A stretch of DNA of 63,526 bases, counting the filler, from Octopus bimaculoides (taxonomy: Eukaryota), in NCBI RefSeq assembly GCF_001194135.2. It is 5 parts of 5 records of this genome, joined end to end, with 100 filler letters (N's around TTAATTAATTAA, not from the genome) between each part and the next. Parts side by side here need not be neighbours in the genome. Positions count along the whole stretch, not along the records: positions 31,146 to 59,935 come from NC_068983.1; 4 more parts are not named here. One strand, 5' to 3'. The notes beneath the pieces are model-generated. The model saw only the letters and a list, made by a program, of their open reading frames with translations. It searched no databases and was not told where the DNA came from. Made by a program: the position numbers and the translations under genes. Shown in pieces: positions 31,046 through 59,935 of this stretch; the first letter of the stretch is position 1, and each line of letters opens with the position of its first letter.

Positions 31046-31145
31046 NNNNNNNNNNNNNNNNNNNNNNNNNNNNNNNNNNNNNNNNNNNNTTAATTAATTA
31101 ANNNNNNNNNNNNNNNNNNNNNNNNNNNNNNNNNNNNNNNNNNNN

Positions 31146-31378
31146 TTTAGTGTCCAGTTAAGGATGTGGTAGCTGTAGCTTATAACTGGGACAGCTAAAG
31201 TGTTGATACCCATTATCTTGTTTTTAGCATTGAGCTCTGTTTTTAGCATTGATCTAACTCGTCTATAGTACTCTTTCTTTATTTTTTCTTTCATTTGTGT
31301 ATGTTGTATCCTACCAAGTTCATTGACTCCTAAATACTTGTATGGTTGGCTTTCGTCTAGTTCTCTTATTTCATTGGC

Positions 31379-31432
<54 letters not shown>

Positions 31433-32400
31433 ATTATTGTTATTATCATTTCTCTTTATCACATGTTTGCTTGGTATTACTGGAGTCTTGCATGCGTAGC
31501 GAGCTTACTCCCTGCAGCCTATTGTACCATGCTGTCCGTCCTTTTTAGCTATCTAATGCTTTCCTGATTATTCTGGCTGTGCCAGGGAGGCAAGGCTTTT
31601 GTAATAGTTCTACTGGAAATTCTATTCCAGTTTCTTTTATATTCCTCTTGATACCTTCTCATACTTTTCCAAGCACGCAACAATAATTACCACTATCTTC
31701 ACTCTCTTCATTTTCCTTAGCCGAGTCATTTAGTACTTAAGAGGGTTGTATTTCTCGACTATTCGTGGGTCAAAGGGGTATGTAACATCAACATACAGCA
31801 CATGTAGTGAACCTTGTCCACTACCATTAGATCTGATCTGTTATGCTCTAAGCACCTGATTTTTTTTTGGATTGGGAAATCCCACAGTATTGAGCCAGTC
31901 TCCGACTCTGTCACCCTCTGCAGTTTGTGCTCATGCCACGTCTTGCTTCTCTCTAGTACCCACTTTTCACACATTTTCCAATGTAGGACCTCCGTGATCT
32001 GATCGTGTCGCCACAACTTGCAATGGTTTTGAGGAAGTCTAGAGCATTCTTTCGTGATATGGCCAATGATTTCATTCACTGTATTGCAGATACGGCACAG
32101 TGGAGACACTTTCTCATTCCTAAGTTTGACTCTCCAGTTTGTGGCCAAAGCTTGGTCTTGTGATGCCAGTACAGTGCTCTCGGTCTCTTTTCTTAGTGTT
32201 CCTTTCATCACCCAATCCTTTTTTCCAGCAACTTCTGTTGTAGCTACATGGAATTGATTGTGTAGTCCCTTCTTGCGTAATTCTTTTTCACCTCCCTTTT
32301 TCTACTTCTTCCTTTGTCTTTCCTTTTACTCTGCTTTCAATACTCTCTCCTTCCTAACTGTCACTAACAAAGTTTCCTTACTTTAGACTCGGTATCTCAT
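31146..32400 (-). mobile_element. R4/Dong LINE fragments separated by (AAT)n
   Basis: PYKYLGVNE...INTLAVPVISYS; ETESTVLASQDQAL...CRICNTVNEIIGHITKEC...ILWDFPIQ...NRSDL. Confidence 0.8.
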
Positions 32401-36322: not shown

Positions 36323-36526
36323 ATGGAAAAATCAGAAAATTTCGACGCTGCTACAAAGCAATTAACTAAATATATAATTGATTACTTCGGTAATATTGGA
36401 AGCAGAAATGCTTATCCTGCGGTTGAACCCGGATTCATGAAAACTTTAATACCAGCTGAAGCTCCTGAAACACCTGATAAATGGGAAAATGTGTTTAATG
36501 ATATCGAAAGAGTAATTATGCCAGGG
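36323..36526 (+). CDS. DDC-like: Decarboxylase coding exon 1 (MEKSENF...DIERVIMPG)
   Basis: YPAVEPGF motif; donor GTAAGT at 36527, phase 0. Confidence 0.95.
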
Positions 36527-39500
36527 GTAAGTTAATAATATTATATATACTTTGTCGTTAGGGAACAGGCGACTCTGATGCATGTAACGATATTTAATTT
36601 CTTCTCTCTTTATAAAATCCTGCTAACATAAAATCTATTGTCATTATTTTAAATCATTAAATATGTCCTCACGTATTTTTCCATGGCCATTTCCTTCTCA
36701 TAAAACTTTATTGTCTTTTATAAATATAATTCCTGTCTAAAAATATATTTCAAAATAGTTTGATAAGTGCCAACGCACATAATTATACACTGTTGCTTCT
36801 GCTATATATTAATAAAAAATAAACACATCCTCATAATTTGAATTTTATTTTACCTGCTGTCATAACCATACCTGCATATATTTGCTCATCGACTTGAAGC
36901 GTTACACTGCAAATTGGTATGACTCAAATATATTAAACCTTTCCTCATCTGGAGGCCCTGTTCTTTTCTCTTCTCTTCTGTTATTTTCCGTATTTTTCTT
37001 CACTCTGATGAAGCTCCATGTACCAGATCAAATATACTATAGAATATGACGAATATTATTCTCAGAATTTTCTTTGACAGTGCTGACGGGCATTGGAAGC
37101 AGAAACGGCTGTTAGAAACGATGAAGTTTTGCATTAAAAAATAATAATCGATGATAGTCAATTTGTTTGTTGTTCAAGAATTTTCTTCATTTTCTGCTTA
37201 AGTTAAATTTGATTCCTTCCTGATAAACTCTTGTTTATTTTGTTATTGCCTGTATACTATGAGCATAGTATGCATTGCATATGCATACCCAGGGTTTACA
37301 TACGTAATTTATACCGTTGTAAAAACGGATATTCTTATCCCTTAGGTGGTTATTCCAACCGCTAACTCTACTAACTTATATATATATATTTATATATAAG
37401 CAAAATAATTGAGATTCAGATGAATTAGGTACTTAAGTTGAAGCACCAAAAATGAATGCAGTATTATCCATACCACTTCAAAATAAGGTGGATAAAATCA
37501 AAATAAGCAACAGGATAACCAGTGGTGATGCACTACGACCGTTTCAAGCGGCTCCATTTAACTGAACAATGCAATCATTACATAAATTTAAATGTAGGGC
37601 TATCCTCAGCTGCATAAATGAATAAATAGAAATAGAATTGTTTTAATCAGTCGGACACATTTGTATAATTTTACTTAAATCCTCTCAATGTAAGAAAACA
37701 GATAAAATCCATGCCGTTGTGACTTCAGCTTAGAAGTTTCTAAGACATTTGGAAAAATTCTGTTTGGATTGTCACTGAATTTGGTTTATCAAATCTTTGT
37801 ATATCAGATCTAAGACTAGGGAATAGTGTCTGTTATGAAAGGGCATGGGGGAGTTGACAGAATCAGTGAGTCTAGTCATAAAACTTGTCAAGACTATTTT
37901 GAAGTAGTATAAAGTAATTGGCTATAATGAGGTTGGGTAGTGGAAGACTTCAAATCAAGTAGTAAATCCAAGCAGCATTTTGGCAATATTTTGAATGATG
38001 CTTTCATATTGAAGGAATGTATTAAGTGGTTAACTAGTATGTAAAATGTCCACGTGAGAATATAGAATAAGAAAGACAGACATCACGATAGACAGATATG
38101 GGATGTGAGGGAAGTGAATAGAAGAGACGAGAAAGCGGGGAAAGAAAGGAATGGGATAGGTGCGGGAAAAAATGAATGTGAGCTAAAGTATAATACAATA
38201 AAAAATCAAAATCAAAAATAAAAATTCAAAAAATAAAGATAAGGATAAGATGCCAGTATTATTCTTTTTTTGGTGTCGATTCGGGGTGAGAGGTCAGGCG
38301 TTAAGGTTTTGGTAGAGTGGAGGAGGAAGGCGTTTATGTCTATTAATTTAATTTAATTCTAGATTCGGTGGGGTCAGAGAGAATATTTAGTTCAGTGGTC
38401 GGTAGGGTCAGTTTCTGATCAGATCCGGTTCTGATAAGAAGTAAAATTTCATTGGTCTAGAGATAGGTTACGTCAACAACTGGTGTTTGTATGATGTTAT
38501 TGTATGATGATTTGGAGTTGCGGTTTCAAAACCCGAGAGGAAGAAGCCGATAAAGGGAATGTTGTAGTAATCATGGACTCAGAACAATACATGAACACTA
38601 CCCTAATCCTCCGTCATTTACTACGAAAATATCAATAGCTACAGTCAATCCAAAATAATGGCAAAACGTACTAATCTTATCCATCAGTTCCAACAAGATT
38701 TAACGGAAAAGGATAGAGATTAGCTAGATTTGACTGTAAAACCAACAACTTTTATAGACTTCCCAAAATCCACAAAAGTAAAGCCATAAGCGAAGCTTGC
38801 AGCAAATCAACTTCTTTAGTCATGACTATTCCACATCCCAGAGATCTCAAAATGAGACCAACTGTGGCCTGTCCGTGTTGGACACAAAACTCAGTCACTT
38901 TATTGACGTGCTTTTAAAACCTATTCTCCAACACATACCAATGTTTATAAGGAATGATCTGTACTTTTAAAATCGTTTCCCGAACAAAACCAGCAAGAAA
39001 TCCCTCCTAGTTTCATTCGATGTAATAAACCTCTACATTCCAATTCCTCACGAATACAGAATAGAAGCCATACAATTCTGGCTGCAAAATTCTCAAATGA
39101 CATTCCTGACCAAATTGGAAGAAGGGTCATCATTGAATGAATAAAATTCATCCTACAGAACAACTTCATCGAGAACACCTACAGACATTCATCAGGCACT
39201 GCGATGGGAACGAGGGTAACCCCTTCTTTTACTAACCTTGTCATGGCATAATTGGAATTCCAAATATACGAACACACAAGACTGAAATTTGGATACCACT
39301 TCCAAAAATACTTTTCCACCAACTGGAAACGCTACCTGGATGACTGTTTTATTCTGTGGTCGTATAATCTTGAGTAAGTCTTAGAATTTAAAAACTTAAT
39401 CAACAGTATTAACCATATTATCCAGTTAACGATGGAATGCAGCCACAAACAGCAACCCTTTCTGGACATCTTAATCACAAAAGAGATATTGAAATTGAAA

Positions 39501-54400: not shown

Positions 54401-57078
54401 TTGATAACATTAAAGAAATTGGTGCTGTATGTAAGTTGCTTTAATTATGTACCTAATTAATTTTCATACTAATTGGAAGCTACATCTTCCTCTTTACAGC
54501 TACTTTTTCCAGTAGTCGTAGTCATTTCCATTCGTAATATTCTAATTTCCTTGAGGACATTATTGTTATTAGCCACCCACAGCTAACATATTCCTCAGGG
54601 ATGAGCGCGTATAAATATATCTAATCTCAGATATCAAAAAACTAAAAAGAGGTTCNNNNNNNNNNNNNNNNNNNNNNNNNNNNNNNNNNNNNNNNNNNNN
54701 NNNNNNNNNNNNNNNNNNNNNNNNNNNNNNTATTGCTTGAAACGAAAGGGTAATAATGCTCAATTAGATTTTATAATCAAGTCTTTAATTCTGCTGCACC
54801 TCACTTCCAAGTACACATGGATAATATATTCTTTATAATTGAATATTTTTCTATTCAAGTACATAAGTTGATGCTATGCCAAGGTATAGTCTTAATATTT
54901 ATCAGATTCATTGAAAGTAAATACGATTGTGTCATAATTATGTGTTGTTTATTACAGGTAAAGATGAAGGTATCTGGTTGCACATAGACGCTGCATATGC
55001 AGGAAATGCATTTATATGTCCTGAATACCGTTATCTGATGAACGGTGTGGAAGTAAGTCCTAAGCAATTAATAAAACTGAAAATAACACACGGAGCTGTA
55101 GACTTCAATACTTTATTATGATGATAGATATTTTAAAGGTCTCATACATTAGAACATCTGCTATTTGTATTATTATTATTATTACTGAGATGCAACTAGT
55201 TATCTGACATAAAACGAAACTTTATTTGAGTAAAAGAGATAGAAAAGGTCAATGCAGATTAGCGACGGTTTCAGTTTAGTTTACAAATGAATAAAAAATT
55301 ATTCCAATTTCCCCCTCAATTTTAAACATCCTCAGTCCACATTAAACCGCAATATATGTACCACGTGGAGTGTACTTTTTGAGTTCAGTACCATCGTCTG
55401 AGTTCAGATCTTTGGGTTAATATATCACGTTAAATTTGATATTTTCAAATAAATTTAGAAGAAATATGTTTCATATTCAGTTTTTGGTTCCTATTTTATA
55501 GTATGCAGATTCCATTTGTATGAGTCCCCACAAATGGTTACAAGTACCTATAGGTTGTTCGGTATTATGGTAAGTAAATTTCCATTTAGTCTTCTTAAAA
55601 ACGTAAATTATTTTCTACGTTGATTAATGAATAAACATAAACAGAAATGTGTTATCAAGTCATGTGTATTTAATATATTTATTAAGAATAAACATTACCA
55701 TCAGCTTTTAGACTTGTAAACATTCAAGAGCAAAGAGTCTAGAGTCTAGAGTATGTATTTTCTATTCATGCATTATGCTTGTGGTTTAATTGTATTTACA
55801 AATACAGTAATGATTAAAAAAGTATTATAGAACCCTAAATAGTCAATCAGAAATAGGTTATCAAGATAGCACATAGTATTCCGATTTCTGAAATAGACGC
55901 ATAATATAGAATATTTTAAAAGTAGAATATTTTTATTCACCGAAATTCTGTTTTGTCTTTTAGGTTACAAAATAGCAATAAACTTGTCGATTCTATTCCC
56001 GAGCCTGGTGAATATTTGCAATGTACAGAGAATTCAGAAATGCCAAATTTTATGGTAAGATAATTTAACATTTTTCTATCTAATTTAATGTCTTCGACCA
56101 TACTGCACCAGTTGTTGTTACATTGGTTGAATCCCTGCTAAATATAGAAAGACGTTTGGAAGGTGATTATTGGTGAAGTATTGTTGCTTTAGGAAATTAT
56201 TTAAGAAGCTAGAATACTGAATATTGTGGAATGCTGAGGATCAAACGGGAAGATCACATCTATAGCTGTAAAAGATGTTGAAATGAGAGAATGAGAAAGA
56301 AAAGCAGCAGTAAACAGAGAAAATGAAGAATAATGAAAGATAACGATAAAAAGTAAGAAATGATTTCAAATTTCTGTGGCTTTGACTTTGAAGCTATAAC
56401 TTAAAATAAACCACACAGGTAATACTTGAAGACGGAGGTCATTATCAAAGAGCAAAGGGTAGGTAATGATTTTTCAAAAAGCGTATAGTGATATAAAAAG
56501 GTTTTGTTTGAACGTATAGGTATTGCAGTGCGAAGCAGTTTTCCTCTATACAATAAGTTTCATATTTCACAGTAAACTATCGAGTTAACTTTTATAAAGT
56601 CTACTCCAAATGCCAGAAAATATGATTGCTGATGCACCTGCCATATTTCCTAAACAACCTGATAAGATTTCCAGAAGCCGATGCTATGTATGATAATGAG
56701 AAAATAGCATAAAGTGGCTTTAACCAAAACAAAGTAAGTTTCTACAGAATGTCCTGACTTCTACAAATCCTTTTTCTTAAAATGTTTCAATGAGGCACAT
56801 GAAAATCATCCAAAGATTAAATGAAAAAGATTATTAAGTATTTCAAATAAAATAGGAAAAGGGGTTGTTCCTTGTGTATGAATATCTCTTTTAGATAAAA
56901 TTACCAACTCTACTAATCTATACAACGGCATTGATTTCAGATATAAAATTATTTCAAGATATATTCAATTATGTCAATAATGTGCCTGGTGTACCCTTAT
57001 TAGACGGGTAATCATGATAGGGATATTGAGCCACTTATTTTTAACCAGCGATAATTCATAAATAAATCTTGTTTTGCT

Positions 57079-57147
<69 letters not shown>

Positions 57148-57491
57148 CTTGTTTGGGAATGAGTATCATGTATGATTCTCAGATGCCAGGGAAATAAACC
57201 CTCTGTATTACATGTGATACATAGGACAGGCTAAGTTTTGAAAAGTCTAATTGTTCATTTATTTGAAGTGTCTACATGGATCTGTACAATTATATGCTGC
57301 TACAAAAACGAACACAGAAAATCATACTCACACATGTCAAGTAATCGTGTGTACTTTATAGTAAATGTTGTACATCGCAATCTTTATTTTAAACTTGGCA
57401 AATTCCTTGTGGACGTCCGTTTCGATCTCTGAAACTTTGGTTTGTTTTACGAATCTTTGGGATACACAGACTTCAGGAACTCATCAGAAAG
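36323..57491 (+). CDS. DDC-like: Aromatic-L-amino-acid decarboxylase family paralog (group II PLP-dependent); 10 coding exons, 379 aa, 3'-partial
   Basis: Spliced protein aligns to DDC with only two small indels (+1 aa in exon 1, -2 aa in exon 9); [19 protein letters not shown] (PLP lysine) and FRSLKLW motifs; exon lengths 204/114/120/135/144/67/95/68/91/99; orthology to DDC, TDC or HDC not established. Confidence 0.93.
38427..40760 (+). mobile_element. Decayed Penelope-like element (RT + GIY-YIG) with inverted 5' terminal repeat, in coding intron 1
   Basis: [52 protein letters not shown]; 38427-38545 is an inverted copy of 40431-40555. Confidence 0.85.
40880..41840 (-). mobile_element. Tc1/mariner (maT-like) transposase fragments
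   Basis: [20 protein letters not shown] scrap; WPPNSPDLN...[11 protein letters not shown]; TIR-like tacacagggtgc at ~41198. Confidence 0.7.
42625..42738 (+). CDS. DDC-like: Decarboxylase coding exon 2 ([38 protein letters not shown])
   Basis: CAG acceptor, GTAAGT donor, 114 nt as in DDC. Confidence 0.92.
44190..44760 (-). mobile_element. CR1-group LINE RT C-terminal fragment
   Basis: [19 protein letters not shown]...[16 protein letters not shown]. Confidence 0.8.
44947..46334 (-). mobile_element. Tc1-like transposon with DD37E spacing and ~110-140-bp TIRs
   Basis: FMHDN...SPDLNLIEN with 37 residues between D and E; TIR CACCCAGAA(T/C)CAC at both ends; TA on the left, TG on the right. Confidence 0.85.
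46945..47130 (+). mobile_element. Short RTE LINE 3' fragment
   Basis: [41 protein letters not shown]. Confidence 0.6.
47502..47621 (+). CDS. DDC-like: Decarboxylase coding exon 3 ([10 protein letters not shown]...GGGVIQ)
   Basis: CAG acceptor, GTAAGT donor, 120 nt. Confidence 0.95.
47773..47907 (+). CDS. DDC-like: Decarboxylase coding exon 4 ([16 protein letters not shown]...LIAYKSEE)
   Basis: TAG acceptor, GTAAGT donor, 135 nt. Confidence 0.92.
48523..48759. mobile_element. mariner-derived foldback MITE
   Basis: TA|TTTGGTTGGACATAAT ... ATTATGCACCAACCTAA|TA; ~100-bp inverted arms; TIR resembles TTAGGTTGGTGCA mariner ends. Confidence 0.8.
49380..49740 (-). mobile_element. Penelope-like RT fragment
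   Basis: [21 protein letters not shown] motif. Confidence 0.7.
50703..50846 (+). CDS. DDC-like: Decarboxylase coding exon 5 (THSSFAKAC...GLVPFY)
   Basis: CAG acceptor, GTAAGT donor, 144 nt; His192 equivalent present. Confidence 0.95.
51930..52360 (-). mobile_element. CR1-group LINE AP-endonuclease fragment
   Basis: [15 protein letters not shown]...TYRPP...DNILDLCF. Confidence 0.75.
52984..53080 (+). repeat. ~31-bp AT-rich minisatellite, 3 copies
   Basis: atattatattatattcatagtatattatgt repeated. Confidence 0.85.
53690..54290 (+). mobile_element. Decayed RTE (BovB-like) RT fragment
   Basis: [12 protein letters not shown]...IVQSFEYL...[13 protein letters not shown]; ends ~70 nt before exon 6. 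Confidence 0.65.
54364..54430 (+). CDS. DDC-like: Decarboxylase coding exon 6 ([22 protein letters not shown])
   Basis: CAG acceptor, GTAAGT donor, 67 nt, ends in phase 1. Confidence 0.95.
54958..55052 (+). CDS. DDC-like: Decarboxylase coding exon 7 ([16 protein letters not shown]...NGVE)
   Basis: CAG acceptor, GTAAGT donor, 95 nt. Confidence 0.96.
55502..55569 (+). CDS. DDC-like: Decarboxylase coding exon 8 ([23 protein letters not shown]), PLP lysine
   Basis: TAG acceptor, GTAAGT donor, 68 nt. Confidence 0.95.
55964..56054 (+). CDS. DDC-like: Decarboxylase coding exon 9 ([20 protein letters not shown]...MPNFM), catalytic loop
   Basis: TAG acceptor, GTAAGA donor, 91 nt; Tyr falls exactly on DDC Tyr332. 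Confidence 0.88.
57393..57491 (+). CDS. DDC-like: Decarboxylase coding exon 10 ([16 protein letters not shown]...ELIRK) with non-canonical AA acceptor
   Basis: 99 nt as in DDC; donor GTGAGT at 57492; acceptor dinucleotide 57391-57392 reads AA. Confidence 0.88.
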
Positions 57492-59156
57492 GTGAGTTTA
57501 CTGTCTTATTGTACAAGCTGTGGCTATCGTTCTTACTATAACATCAAACTTATCTCTGCTCATAAGATGTATAATTGCCATGACATTGGAGAAATGCTAA
57601 GAATATATAGCGAATAGCTATATTATACTAATTTACTTAAACATCCAGGAAATGAATTAACAAGGAGGCATAGCGTTTTCTAATTATATAACTCTGAACA
57701 TTATTTACATTTGACGGATATTTGTCCACAACGTTTCGGCTGATATACCCTCCAGGAAATGGGGAAAATTTTGAACCTGTATATTTTTTTATGCTTGTCA
57801 GGTATTTTTTGTTATTATTATTATTATTATTATTAAGGTCACTGCCTGGAATCGAACTCGGAATCTTGAGGTTAGTAGCCCGCGCTCTTAACCACTACGC
57901 TATATGCCCGTGGCCAATTATGGAGTGAATTTTAGGGTTTATAAATCTAATATTTTCTTATCCTTCCTTAATATGCTATTCATATCTACACTTGGTCTGC
58001 TTAGGAGGTTGTTGTGTCCTAGCATATGTGCTGCTTCTTTTAGTTTTCGTATTTTCCAGTGGTTTTCTCTGTCTATCATTTTAACTTCATCCCACAGGGG
58101 AGGTGTTCTCCATTTTTCCATACGTGATCAGCTATACCCTATTTATTAATATCTCCTCGTGTCACAGCTTTGCGATGTTCCTCTATCTTTATTTTGGATT
58201 GGGCGGCATGTTTCGCCTTTGTATAGCCTACCACAGCTGCATGGGATGGAGTACACGCAGTTTCTGGTGATATTCTCTTCTATTCGTGGTTTTACTCGAA
58301 GGAGATATTTGAGATGTGTTGTATTACTTTTGAATACTGTCCTGATGTCATATGGGCCGCATATCTTTTGTATCTTTTCAGAGAGGCCTTCAACATAGGG
58401 TACACAGACTGAGGACAGTTTATCAGTTTCATCCTCTTTTCTTCATAATTGGAGTGGAGTGTATGCTTTTGGGGTAGTTGTTGCATAATAGATTGTTAGT
58501 GAGCTTGATCATTTCTTCGTGGTGGGTATCACGATCGCTACTCATATTCATTGCTCGATGTTTTAGGCACTGAGCAATCCTTTTCTTTACACTGTATGGA
58601 TGGTGGGAATTGGAGTTGAGGTATCGTCCAGTGAAGGTTGTCTTGCGATATACGGATGTCCTGAATCCCTACTTGGTGTGTGTTATTAATACATCCAGGA
58701 ATGTTTGCTGATTGTCTTTTTCCTTTTCCATTGTAAACTGTATGGATGGCTTTATTGAGTTCACATGATCTAACAGCACTTGAACATCTTCCTGGTGGGG
58801 CCAGAGTATGACGGTGTCATCAGCATATCGCAGCCATAGGGTTGGTTTTAGTGGTGTTGAGTCTAAAGCAAAATTCTTAAAGTAGTCCGTGTATATATTG
58901 CCTATTATCGGTAATAATGGCGAACTCATAGCTAAACCCTCTTCTTGTCGATATATATCAGTGTCCATACTGAAGTAGGTAGTTTCTACACTACTGATAT
59001 ATATCTACACACGAAAACTAAAAAACATATGCTAGGACACAACAACCTCCTAAGTCGACCAAGTGCGGATATGAACAGTATATGGGAACCAGTGTTAAGG
59101 AAGTATAGGAGAATATTAGATTTATAAGATCTAAAATTCACTCCATAATTGCTCAC

Positions 59157-59229
59157 GGGCATATGGCGTAGTGATTAAGATCGCGGGCTACTAACTTAAG
59201 ATTCCGTGTTCGATTCCAGGCAGTAACCT
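59157..59229 (+). ncRNA. tRNA-like Pol III module inside the Penelope terminal repeat (mirror copy at 57836-57909, minus strand)
   Basis: A box TGGCGTAGTG(G/A), B box GTTCGATTCC; tRNA-derived rather than a true tRNA gene. Confidence 0.65.
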
Positions 59230-59304
59230 AAATAATAATATTAATAACAACATCAAAAAATACCTTAGGAATGAGAACCCAGGTTCAAAATTTCCCCAAG
59301 ACAC

Positions 59305-59345
59305 CTAATGAAGGCTGGTGGGTATATCAGCCAAAACGTTGCGTT
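59305..59345 (+). ncRNA. Degenerate hammerhead-ribozyme core in the Penelope terminal repeat
   Basis: CTAATGA-a-GGCTG...CAGCC-AAAAC; the mirror arm keeps CAGCC-GAAAC, implying a CTGATGA...GAAAC consensus. Confidence 0.55.
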
Positions 59346-59689
59346 ATCAACAAACAAGATGAGGACAAATATCCGTCAAATATAAATAATGTAAATAATG
59401 TACATAATTCCTCATCTCTTAAATATAGAACTATATAACTCTGAAGTTGAAAAGCTACAAAATAATGAACGTTCGACTAGGAAAACTCTGCAAACCGATT
59501 CATAATTAACAGAGAATTCCAGTGAAAATTAGGAAAAAATTATAAATCAATGAAAAATACCAACTATCCAATGAATACATCTAATTTTTATGGTTTCACG
59601 ATTTTAATCAAATATGATATTATTGGTACAATCTTAACTTAACTATCTCATATATATATATATATATATATAGGAAAATGTAAAAAATC

Positions 59690-59935
59690 TAAGAGACTTA
59701 CAACAGGACAAAAGCCTTACTATCAAAGAAGCTGACAAAGGTAGTACTGTAGTCCTAATGAACACAGATTTTTACAAACACCTAGCACTCTCCTTACTAA
59801 ACGATAACTCCTTCTATGAAACTATCACCAACTATAAACAACAAAAAACTCTCAAAAACCTCACCACCCTTATACTCCAGCAAGGTCAAGGACTCACGGA
59901 CAAAGAAAAAGATTACATCACTAATTTCAAATGCA
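59690..59935 (+). mobile_element. Penelope-like RT N-terminal fragment before a gap
   Basis: IKEADKGSTVVLMNTDFYKHLALSLLND...KEKDYITNF. Confidence 0.7.

What the first reader, a model, noticed from the sequence alone, without database searches (positions are those of the whole stretch)
57380..57400. Intact decarboxylase exon with an AA acceptor: candidate A-to-I editing-created 3' splice site
Seen: the sequence reads ...tctttattttAA|ACT TGG CAA ATT CCT. The exon is exactly 99 nt like its DDC homolog, has no stop and has a good donor. Every other acceptor in the gene is AG. The codon before ACT is an in-frame TAA, so no upstream AG can rescue this frame. The nearest upstream AG is 31 nt away and out of frame. 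The first downstream AG removes the WQIPxGRxFRSLKLW motif. Established: coleoids edit RNA heavily with ADAR, and mammalian ADAR2 pre-mRNA shows that AA-to-AI editing can create an acceptor. Inference: editing of A57392 could gate production of the enzyme. A recent null allele, a non-canonical GT-AA intron or an assembly error are equally possible.
Basis: partly seen in the sequence, partly recalled or inferred. Interest (0 to 1): 0.82.

Follow-up and report, generated by a model that had tools for sequence, protein, structure and literature searches.

The report
Octopus decarboxylase exon lacking AG acceptor
One of three neighbouring dopa-decarboxylase-like genes of Octopus bimaculoides has an intact, essential 99-base exon whose upstream splice signal reads AA instead of the universal AG; this is most likely a recent splice-site lesion in a spare gene copy, and RNA editing as the repair mechanism is possible but has no positive support.

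Summary
The piece is Octopus bimaculoides chromosome CM046603.1 and holds exons 1-10 of a 12-exon aromatic-L-amino-acid-decarboxylase-like gene ("A"). Exon 10 (57393-57491) follows tttattttAA. The other 10 acceptors are AG. An in-frame TAA and a 107-nt AG-free zone rule out any alternative acceptor. The homologous acceptor is AG in paralogues B and C, O. sinensis B and O. vulgaris C, so AA is derived. RefSeq XP_014775469.1 uses this GT..AA intron; UniProt A0A0L8H5W6 skips the exon. Gene A is otherwise no more degenerate than B or C.

The editing idea gained nothing. No long-range duplex covers the site. A 15-bp AU-rich local hairpin pairs A57392 but is no better than 23 of 200 shuffles. A published O. 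bimaculoides screen found no editing-made splice sites, though its sensitivity was low.

My estimates:
- Young null or hypomorphic lesion in a redundant paralogue: about 0.5.
- Reference error or polymorphism: about 0.2.
- Unedited GT-AA splicing: about 0.15.
- A-to-I-created acceptor: about 0.09.

No reads or transcripts could be examined, and no orthologue of A was retrieved. Allele counts at CM046603.1:1,177,005 and junction reads would decide.

The parts
36323..56054 (+). Exons 1-9 of AADC-like gene A: 36323-36526, 42625-42738, 47502-47621, 47773-47907, 50703-50846, 54364-54430, 54958-55052, 55502-55569, 55964-56054. All junctions are GT..AG.
   Evidence: tblastn with human DDC. Splice-site inspection and translation identical to RefSeq XP_014775469.1.
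54283..56086 (+). Tract 92-97% identical to paralogue B, introns included (gene conversion or recent duplication). It ends 32 nt into intron 9.
   Evidence: blastn of L001 against L002. Lineage-specific substitution counts.
56055..57392 (+). Intron 9, 1338 nt, GT..AA. The donor GTAAGA is U2-type. There are no assembly gaps in it.
57354..57359 (+). Best branch-point-like motif, cttTAt, with A57358 lying 34 nt upstream of the acceptor. This is inferred from the yUnAy consensus only.
   Evidence: Read from the sequence; not tested.
57360..57361 (+). Nearest upstream AG. Using it would add 31 nt that begin with TAA directly after exon 9, giving a premature stop.
57355..57393 (+). Predicted local hairpin with arms 57355-57371 and 57377-57393. 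About 15 bp, AU-rich, with two G-U pairs and two mismatches. A57392 pairs with U57356 (p = 0.77).
   Evidence: Base-pair probabilities. -6.5 kcal/mol, z = -1.24, 23 of 200 shuffles fold as well; absent at the paralogue acceptors.
57374..57385 (+). 12-nt insertion (ATCGCAATCTTT; placement uncertain by a few nt) relative to paralogue C. It forms much of the polypyrimidine tract.
   Evidence: Pairwise alignments of A against C of O. bimaculoides and O. vulgaris.
57390..57392 (+). TAA in frame with exon 10. Its last two bases, 57391-57392, are the AA 'acceptor'. A57392 is CM046603.1:1,177,005.
57393..57491 (+). Exon 10, 99 nt, phase 0 at both ends. It encodes the conserved [17 protein letters not shown] segment (human AADC residues about 348-380).
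57492..57497 (+). Donor of intron 10, GTGAGT.
57698..58029 (+). Left arm of a long inverted repeat (transposon-derived) in intron 10. It starts 207 nt after exon 10 and would form long dsRNA with the right arm, but it does not include the acceptor.
   Evidence: the repeat finder pairs I1-I4 and I13, 83-93% complementary (window coordinate = L001 + 33322).
59025..59392 (+). Right arm of the same inverted repeat.

Best explanation
The window carries gene A, one of three tandem aromatic-L-amino-acid-decarboxylase-like paralogues (A, B, C) of Octopus bimaculoides. These exist in addition to a canonical DDC.

In the lineage of A, the last base of intron 9 changed from the ancestral G to A, next to a 12-nt insertion in the polypyrimidine tract. 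That destroyed the only usable acceptor of exon 10.

I infer that the lesion is a genuine germline variant and that it strongly impairs inclusion of exon 10. Transcripts of this copy would then mostly skip the exon. The skip is in frame and removes 33 residues that include the invariant WQIPxGRxFRSLK segment, so the product is presumably inactive. Other transcripts would use the AG 31 nt upstream and terminate at once.

On this reading gene A is a young null or hypomorphic copy, tolerated because B, C and DDC remain. The exon is still intact because the lesion is recent.

Shown: the anatomy, the derived state of AA, and the integrity of the rest of the gene. Inferred: that the base is real, and what it does to splicing.
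For: - The window is identical to GCA_001194135.2 CM046603.1 over 26,613 bases.
- The homologous exon-10 acceptor is AG in O. bimaculoides B (ttttAG|AAATGG) and C (ttgtAG|TCCTGG), in O. sinensis B and in O. vulgaris C. A has ttttAA|ACTTGG.
- All other resolved introns in the five genes are GT..AG.
- There is no alternative acceptor and no second copy of exon 10 in the sequenced part of the gene.
- Redundancy: three paralogues within about 100 kb plus a canonical DDC (P0010).
- The UniProt/2015 model A0A0L8H5W6 skips exactly this exon.
- In the recently converted tract, A-specific coding changes are 3 nonsynonymous to 1 synonymous, at a rate close to the intron rate (4/321 against 30/1349). That fits relaxed constraint, but the numbers are tiny.
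- Exon 10 aligns to human AADC residues about 348-380 inside the Pfam Pyridoxal_deC core, so skipping it should inactivate the enzyme.
Against: - All four RefSeq isoforms of the gene include exon 10 through this GT..AA intron, and none skips it, in proteins from two generations of accession numbers (XP_014775469/70 and XP_0528219xx). If RNA-seq junction reads rather than protein alignment support that intron, the exon is spliced in after all.
- Gene A deviates from 153 highly conserved AADC columns no more than B or C do (31 against 38 and 34). It keeps the PLP lysine motif, the histidine, aspartate and loop tyrosine that align with human H192, D271 and Y332, and a full-length Pfam match. There is no independent sign of decay.
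- No read-level or transcript evidence could be examined.
Confidence: 0.5

Rival explanations
1. The A is not the functional state of the gene. It is either a base error in the Illumina-only reference, or the reference carries a rare or heterozygous allele while G is the common allele. On this reading gene A is an ordinary GT-AG gene.
For: - RefSeq models include the exon in every isoform. That is expected if RNA-seq animals carry G.
- The gene is otherwise fully intact.
- The assembly is fragmentary, with ten N runs in the piece.
Against: - The site lies in a gap-free 5.2-kb contig, 2.5 kb from either gap.
- The flanks are unique and not confusable with B or C.
- Per-base error in a deep short-read assembly is low (general knowledge).
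- The site sits beside other A-specific changes: the 12-nt insertion and a changed first codon. The region has really diverged.
Confidence: 0.2
2. This is a genuine non-canonical U2-type GT-AA intron. The spliceosome uses AA directly, probably inefficiently. A good polypyrimidine tract helps, and so does the lack of any competing AG for 107 nt.
For: - RefSeq uses exactly this intron.
- The pyrimidine fraction at -20..-3 is 0.72, within the 0.61-0.83 range of the gene's other acceptors, and T is at -3.
- The AG-free zone runs 57362-57467.
- The only upstream AG is 2 nt after the best branch-point motif, too close to be used (inference).
- Human GT-AA junctions without any editing signal exist (PMC4176328).
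Against: - Non-AG ends in U2 introns are extremely rare, and AG-to-AA mutations normally abolish step 2 of splicing (general knowledge; PMC4176328 makes the same point).
- All four homologous acceptors retain AG.
- The intron is not U12-type, the class that tolerates odd ends: the donor is GTAAGA and there is no TCCTTAAC-like branch site.
Confidence: 0.15
3. ADAR deaminates A57392 in the pre-mRNA, AI is read as AG, and exon 10 is included only in edited transcripts. Editing would then gate production of active enzyme.

A possible path is the short local hairpin, which presents the site as an A-U pair, while the long inverted-repeat dsRNA 300 nt downstream recruits ADAR. That would work like the 'editing inducer elements' described in mammals (my recollection, not checked here).
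For: - Genomic AA sits at a position that must act as the acceptor if the conserved exon is used.
- A57392 is predicted to pair with U57356 (p = 0.77) in a hairpin that the paralogue acceptors lack.
- The 5' neighbour is A, not the disfavoured G.
- Arms of about 330 nt, 83-93% complementary, lie in the next intron.
- There is precedent: human ADARB1, NRK, HOOK3 and COG8 GT-AA sites are edited to GT-AI (PMC4176328).
- Coleoids edit very heavily (PMC9699675).
Against: - The hairpin is weak (-6.5 kcal/mol) and matched by 23 of 200 shuffles. The site is 2 bp from the 3' end of the helix, where ADARs edit poorly (general knowledge).
- No long-range complement exists: the best duplex is -22.1 kcal/mol, and 82% of 40 control sites do as well or better.
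- The 300-nt fold has z = +0.32.
- The long inverted repeat does not include the site, and such repeats are common in octopus introns.
- A screen of O. bimaculoides RNA-seq for AT/AA splice sites found none and concluded that editing very rarely alters splice sites (PMC9699675). Its 50-nt reads and default STAR filters probably could not have reported such a junction (my inference).
- AA is a derived state in a redundant paralogue, not a conserved feature.
Confidence: 0.09

Closest known systems
ADARB1 (ADAR2) self-editing at the -1 site, and the edited human GT-AA junctions in NRK, HOOK3, COG8 and the NARF Alu exon
   Same: A genomic AA sits where a 3' splice site is needed. Editing to AI would make it a functional AG mimic and would decide whether the exon is included (PMC4176328).
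   Different: - The known cases lie inside extended duplexes: an editing-complementary sequence or inverted Alus (my recollection, not checked here). Here only a chance-level 15-bp hairpin covers the site.
- The known cases are alternative or cryptic sites that add sequence. Here the site would be the sole acceptor of a constitutive, catalytically essential exon.
- No RNA evidence exists here.
Splice-acceptor loss in a recently duplicated gene (young pseudogene or null allele)
   Same: The ancestral AG is retained in every relative and lost in one tandem copy. Redundant paralogues are present. One published gene model skips the exon.
   Different: There is no second lesion, and no excess of changes at conserved residues. 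RefSeq still models the exon as included.
Non-canonical U2-type GT-AA introns without editing (human survey, PMC4176328)
   Same: GT donor, AA end, normal polypyrimidine tract, U2-like donor consensus.
   Different: Use of the junction has not been shown here. In humans such sites are mostly alternative and weakly used.
Human and pig aromatic-L-amino-acid decarboxylase (DDC; PDB 3RBF, 1JS3)
   Same: Full-length alignment, E = 2e-145. The PLP-lysine motif, the residues that align with human H192, D271 and Y332, and the WQIPxGRxFRSLK segment are kept.
   Different: Gene A and its paralogues B and C differ from 31-38 of 153 positions that are at least 95% conserved in other animal AADCs. They are a divergent, Octopus-restricted subfamily separate from the canonical octopus DDC (P0010, 57% identity). 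The substrate is unknown.

Membership tests
A-to-I editing-created 3' splice site (ADARB1 -1 site type) | Genomic AA at the position used as acceptor | tested here: met
   AA at 57391-57392. It is the only split that yields the conserved exon in frame.
A-to-I editing-created 3' splice site (ADARB1 -1 site type) | The adenosine lies in a double-stranded RNA structure beyond chance expectation | tested here: not met
   - Local hairpin -6.5 kcal/mol, z = -1.24, 23 of 200 shuffles as good.
- No long-range partner: 82% of controls do as well or better.
- 300-nt fold z = +0.32.
- Prediction only, so this does not exclude editing.
A-to-I editing-created 3' splice site (ADARB1 -1 site type) | A>G mismatch at the site in unspliced RNA, but A in genomic reads | not testable with these tools
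   No read data are available. No transcript-derived protein fragments of the gene's C-terminal 169 residues were found in the protein collection, which includes Logan assemblies of public sequencing runs.
A-to-I editing-created 3' splice site (ADARB1 -1 site type) | Junction use that depends on ADAR | not testable with these tools
   This needs an experiment.
U12-type (minor spliceosome) intron with a non-AG end | Donor /RTATCCTT and a TCCTTAAC-like branch site 10-20 nt before the 3' end | tested here: not met
   The donor is GTAAGATAAT. The last 40 nt hold no match closer than 3 mismatches in 8 (by eye).
Group II PLP-dependent decarboxylase (Pfam PF00282; AADC/DDC family) | Full-length Pyridoxal_deC domain | tested here: met
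   P0121 residues 36-413 match profile positions 1-375 of 375, 447 bits. Human AADC 3RBF, E = 2e-145.
Group II PLP-dependent decarboxylase (Pfam PF00282; AADC/DDC family) | PLP-binding lysine, plus the catalytic histidine, aspartate and loop tyrosine (human K303, H192, D271, Y332) | tested here: met
   [18 protein letters not shown] and GEYLQ align with the human motifs NPHKW, QAHSS, HVDAAYAG and PTYLK.
Group II PLP-dependent decarboxylase (Pfam PF00282; AADC/DDC family) | Decarboxylase activity and substrate | not testable with these tools
31 of 153 conserved columns differ.
Young pseudogene or null allele caused by a splice-site lesion | The lesion is derived: relatives keep the canonical site | tested here: met
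   AG in B and C (O. bimaculoides), B (O. sinensis) and C (O. vulgaris).
Young pseudogene or null allele caused by a splice-site lesion | Relaxed constraint or further disabling changes | tested here: inconclusive
   3 nonsynonymous to 1 synonymous A-specific changes in the converted tract. There are no frameshifts or stops, and no excess loss of conserved residues.
Young pseudogene or null allele caused by a splice-site lesion | Transcripts lack the exon or are mis-spliced | not testable with these tools
   Gene models disagree: UniProt A0A0L8H5W6 skips the exon and RefSeq includes it. I could not see the evidence behind either model.

The most novel reading that the evidence does not exclude
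A57392 is edited to inosine in the pre-mRNA, and only edited transcripts include exon 10. An Octopus-specific monoamine-synthesis-type enzyme would then be switched on by ADAR activity, for example by tissue or temperature. This would be the first editing-made constitutive splice acceptor in a cephalopod. It would also be a case where a germline G-to-A loss is compensated at the RNA level.
Probability: 0.09. Interest if true: 0.72.

Novelty: new member of a known kind. Interest (0 to 1): 0.33.

Why it matters
If the ordinary reading holds, this is one more splice-site lesion in a redundant tandem duplicate. It is useful mainly as an annotation warning. RefSeq XP_014775469.1 and its isoforms rest on a GT..AA intron, while UniProt A0A0L8H5W6 lacks 33 essential residues.

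If the exon is really spliced in from a genomic AA, the locus becomes a clean test case for two questions. The first is whether the very high ADAR activity of coleoids ever creates splice sites; the one published screen (PMC9699675) answered no, with a method of low sensitivity. The second is whether editing can mask a deleterious G-to-A substitution.

Either way, the three-gene AADC-like cluster is restricted to Octopus among the hits and divergent at many conserved positions. Its enzymology has not been studied.

Tried and rejected
1. U12-type intron: rejected. The donor and branch site do not fit.
2. Another acceptor or a shifted exon boundary: rejected. There is an in-frame TAA, upstream AGs lie only at 57360 and further back, and the next AG is at 57468. 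Exact protein-to-genome splitting allows only GT..AA.
3. A second copy of exon 10 in gene A: none in the sequenced DNA. Intron 10 does contain a 2.2-kb N gap.
4. Long-range editing-complementary sequence: none.
5. Known structured RNA around the site: only a sub-threshold SCARNA7 hit in intron 9, 22.9 bits against a gathering score of 65. I treat it as chance.
6. Transcript evidence from Logan assemblies: a search with the C-terminal 169 residues returned no fragment above 47% identity. That search appears to return only proteins of similar length to the query, since it did not even list the gene's own full-length products.
7. An orthologue of gene A in other octopuses:
   - There is no annotated protein above 77% identity outside O. 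bimaculoides.
   - Nothing A-like lies within 10 kb 3' of O. sinensis B.
   - The O. vulgaris locus shows a 900-residue fused two-domain AADC model starting after gene C. A search with B and A concatenated did not return it, so its DNA could not be fetched.
8. Template-switch origin of the hairpin and insertion: the arms match the reverse complement at only 12 of 17 positions (by eye). Not supported.
9. Literature on this gene cluster: nothing found.
Full report
**What is there.** The piece (window 31146-59935) is identical, with 0 mismatches over 26,613 compared bases, to Octopus bimaculoides assembly GCA_001194135.2, chromosome CM046603.1. On the + strand it carries exons 1-10 of a 12-exon gene. 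Its full product is RefSeq XP_014775469.1 (P0121, 485 aa). This is a full-length group II PLP-dependent decarboxylase:
- Pfam Pyridoxal_deC positions 1-375 of 375, 447 bits.
- Human AADC structure 3RBF, E = 2e-145.
- The PLP lysine motif (SPHKW) and the residues that align with human H192, D271 and Y332 are present.

I call this gene A.

**The observation.** Exon 10 is 57393-57491, 99 nt, open, and encodes [33 protein letters not shown]. Its donor is AAG|GTGAGT and it is preceded by tctttattttAA. Exon 9 ends at 56054 in phase 0 with ATG|GTAAGA.
- All ten other acceptors of the gene are AG and all donors are GT.
- A script that enumerates every exon 9/10 split reproducing the RefSeq protein finds exactly one, intron 56055-57392, GT..AA. 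The 29 other introns it could resolve in this gene and four relatives are all GT..AG.
- TAA at 57390-57392 is in frame with the exon, so no upstream acceptor can serve.
- AG dinucleotides occur at 57316, 57340 and 57360, and then not until 57468 inside the exon.
- The polypyrimidine content (0.72) and the T at -3 are normal for this gene.
- The donor is U2-type and there is no U12 branch-site motif, so the minor spliceosome is not an explanation.
- The site lies in a gap-free 5.2-kb contig.

**Family context.** Gene A is one of three AADC-like genes within about 100 kb:
- A lies at 1.156-1.191 Mb.
- B (XP_014775473.1) is convergent with A in the assembly.
- C (XP_014775474.1) lies upstream of B.

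A 652-N gap separates the 3' ends of A and B, so that orientation is not secure. A canonical DDC also exists in Octopus, 57% identical (P0010, O. sinensis).

A is a mosaic. Window 54283-56086 (exons 6-9 with their introns) is 92-97% identical to B, and the similarity stops 32 nt into intron 9. Exons 4 and 5 are also closer to B than to C, at 88-91%. Exon 10 is closest to C (92%), with barely alignable introns.

A, B and C all depart from many positions that are at least 95% conserved in 102 other animal AADCs: 31, 38 and 34 of 153 columns respectively. They are a divergent subfamily, and A is not the most degenerate member.

**AA is derived.** The homologous exon is 99 nt and preceded by AG in four relatives:
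- O. bimaculoides B: ttttAG|AAATGGCAA
- O. bimaculoides C: ttgtAG|TCCTGGCAA
- O. sinensis B: gttAG|AAATGGCAA
- O. vulgaris C: ttgtAG|TCCTGGCAA

Pairwise alignment of A with C shows a 12-nt insertion (ATCGCAATCTTT) seven bases upstream, then ATTTTAA|ACT against ATTGTAG|TCC. So the last intron base is a G-to-A difference within a small patch of A-specific change.

I could not retrieve an orthologue of A from another species:
- No annotated protein above 77% identity exists outside O. bimaculoides.
- Nothing A-like lies within 10 kb beyond O. sinensis B.
- A 900-residue two-domain model that follows gene C in O. vulgaris was not returned by the last protein search.

**Gene models disagree.** UniProt A0A0L8H5W6, from the 2015 genome paper's annotation, joins exon 9 directly to exon 11 (...PNFM|DIQLAH...). 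All four RefSeq isoforms contain exon 10, and the isoforms differ only by skipping exon 2 and/or exon 4. RefSeq thus relies on the GT..AA intron. I cannot see whether that rests on RNA-seq junctions or on protein alignment. This is the main reason my confidence in the null-allele reading is not higher.

**Testing the editing idea.** ADAR needs double-stranded RNA.
- A 300-nt fold around the site is unremarkable: z = +0.32, and 121 of 200 shuffles fold as well.
- I scanned intron 9, exon 10 and intron 10 for the best duplex partner of the 41 nt centred on the site. The best is -22.1 kcal/mol. 82% of 40 control intronic sites find an equal or better partner.
- There is a local hairpin with arms 57355-57371 and 57377-57393, in which A57392 pairs with U57356 (p = 0.77). 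The paralogue acceptors lack it.
- That hairpin is only about 15 bp, AU-rich and -6.5 kcal/mol, with z = -1.24; 23 of 200 shuffles are as good. The site is two pairs from the helix end, which is an unfavourable position for ADARs according to earlier in-vitro work (my recollection, not checked here).
- A long inverted repeat in intron 10 has arms of roughly 330 nt at 57698-58029 and 59025-59392, 83-93% complementary, and flanks a reverse-transcriptase fragment. It would make a strong ADAR substrate 207 nt beyond the exon and could in principle recruit the enzyme. It does not contain the site, and such repeats are commonplace.

**Literature.**
- Editing-made acceptors are established in humans. 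ADARB1, NRK, HOOK3 and COG8 have GT-AA junctions with A>G in poly(A)-minus RNA. Other GT-AA junctions show no editing (PMC4176328).
- For O. bimaculoides itself, Zolotarov et al. 2022 mapped PRJNA285380 reads specifically to look for AT/AA splice sites. They reported none and concluded that editing very rarely alters splice sites (PMC9699675).
- Their reads were trimmed to 50 nt and only three STAR parameters are listed. With STAR's default 30-nt overhang requirement for non-canonical junctions, such a junction could probably not have been reported. That is my inference, so I weight this negative result lightly.

**Constraint.** Inside the A/B conversion tract, with O. sinensis B as outgroup:
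- A-specific changes are 4 of 321 exonic sites (3 nonsynonymous, 1 synonymous) and 30 of 1349 intronic sites.
- B-specific changes are 1 of 321 and 16 of 1349.

This fits relaxed constraint on A, but it is statistically empty. Exon 10 keeps every invariant residue of the [17 protein letters not shown] segment. The lesion is therefore recent relative to the A/C split. No more precise dating is possible.

**Verdict.** The anatomy is real and unusual. These are my subjective weights:
- About 0.5: a young loss-of-acceptor lesion in a redundant paralogue.
- About 0.2: the reference base is wrong or a minor allele.
- About 0.15: direct GT-AA splicing.
- About 0.09: an A-to-I-made acceptor.

Three simple look-ups that these tools cannot do would settle it: allele counts at CM046603.1:1,177,005, junction counts for 56054 to 57393 against 56054 to exon 11, and A>G in unspliced reads. 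Until then this is a good, cheap candidate to check rather than a discovery. I score interest at 0.33.

Noticed in passing
window 54283-56086 (L001 20961-22764) vs L002 15954-18051: Exons 6-9 of gene A and their introns are 92-97% identical to paralogue B. Exons 1-3 and 10-12 are only about 70-88% identical (exons 4 and 5 are intermediate, 88-91%), and the introns there are unalignable. This looks like a gene-conversion or recent-duplication tract whose 3' edge lies 32 nt into intron 9.
   Followed up: partly
window 57698-59392 (arms 57698-58029 and 59025-59392; ORF 58669-58968, minus strand): A transposon-derived unit in intron 10 has inverted arms of about 330 nt (83-93% complementary) around a reverse-transcriptase fragment (YADD motif; weak RVT_1 hit, E = 3e-4, below Pfam's cut-off). 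The arms contain a tRNA-like stretch by eye, but ARAGORN finds no tRNA. A further retroelement-like ORF starts at 59758 and runs off the piece.
   Followed up: partly
window 42625-42738 (exon 2) and 47773-47907 (exon 4): RefSeq isoforms of gene A skip exon 2 (447 aa), exon 4 (440 aa) or both (402 aa). Both skips are in frame and remove conserved core segments, so these isoforms are probably inactive. Paralogues B and C also have several truncated isoforms.
   Followed up: no
L003/L005 (O. sinensis CM016861.1) and L006 69816-72499 (O. vulgaris OX597816.1): O. sinensis isoforms X1 and X2 of one 'gene' have different 5' halves (B-like and C-like) joined to the same 3' exons. In O. vulgaris the gene after C is modelled as a 900-residue protein with two decarboxylase domains. 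Either there is read-through splicing between tandem paralogues, or these are annotation chimeras.
   Followed up: no
P0121, P0123, P0125 (genes A, B, C): All three cluster members differ from 31-38 of 153 positions that are at least 95% conserved in 102 other animal AADCs. Examples are CIGFSW to VNVVISW, NFNPHKW to CMSPHKW, VNFDCS to VPIGCS, and GRRFR to GRPFR. Hits to this subfamily came only from the genus Octopus. It may be an enzyme family with a changed substrate.
   Followed up: partly
L001 40379-40833 / L002 31899-32550 (chromosome 1,193,314-1,193,965): A 652-N gap lies between the 3' ends of genes A and B, so their tail-to-tail arrangement in the assembly may be a scaffolding choice. 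Intron 10 and intron 11 of gene A also contain N gaps of 2.2 kb and 4.8 kb.
   Followed up: no
window 31094-32211, minus strand: ORFs upstream of gene A look like the C-terminal part of a non-LTR retrotransposon protein. This region also has a strong T-over-A skew (AT skew -0.29 to -0.37).
   Followed up: no
window 57006-57202, + strand (intron 9): Weak Rfam hit to SCARNA7: 22.9 bits against a gathering score of 65, E = 0.012. Probably chance.
   Followed up: no
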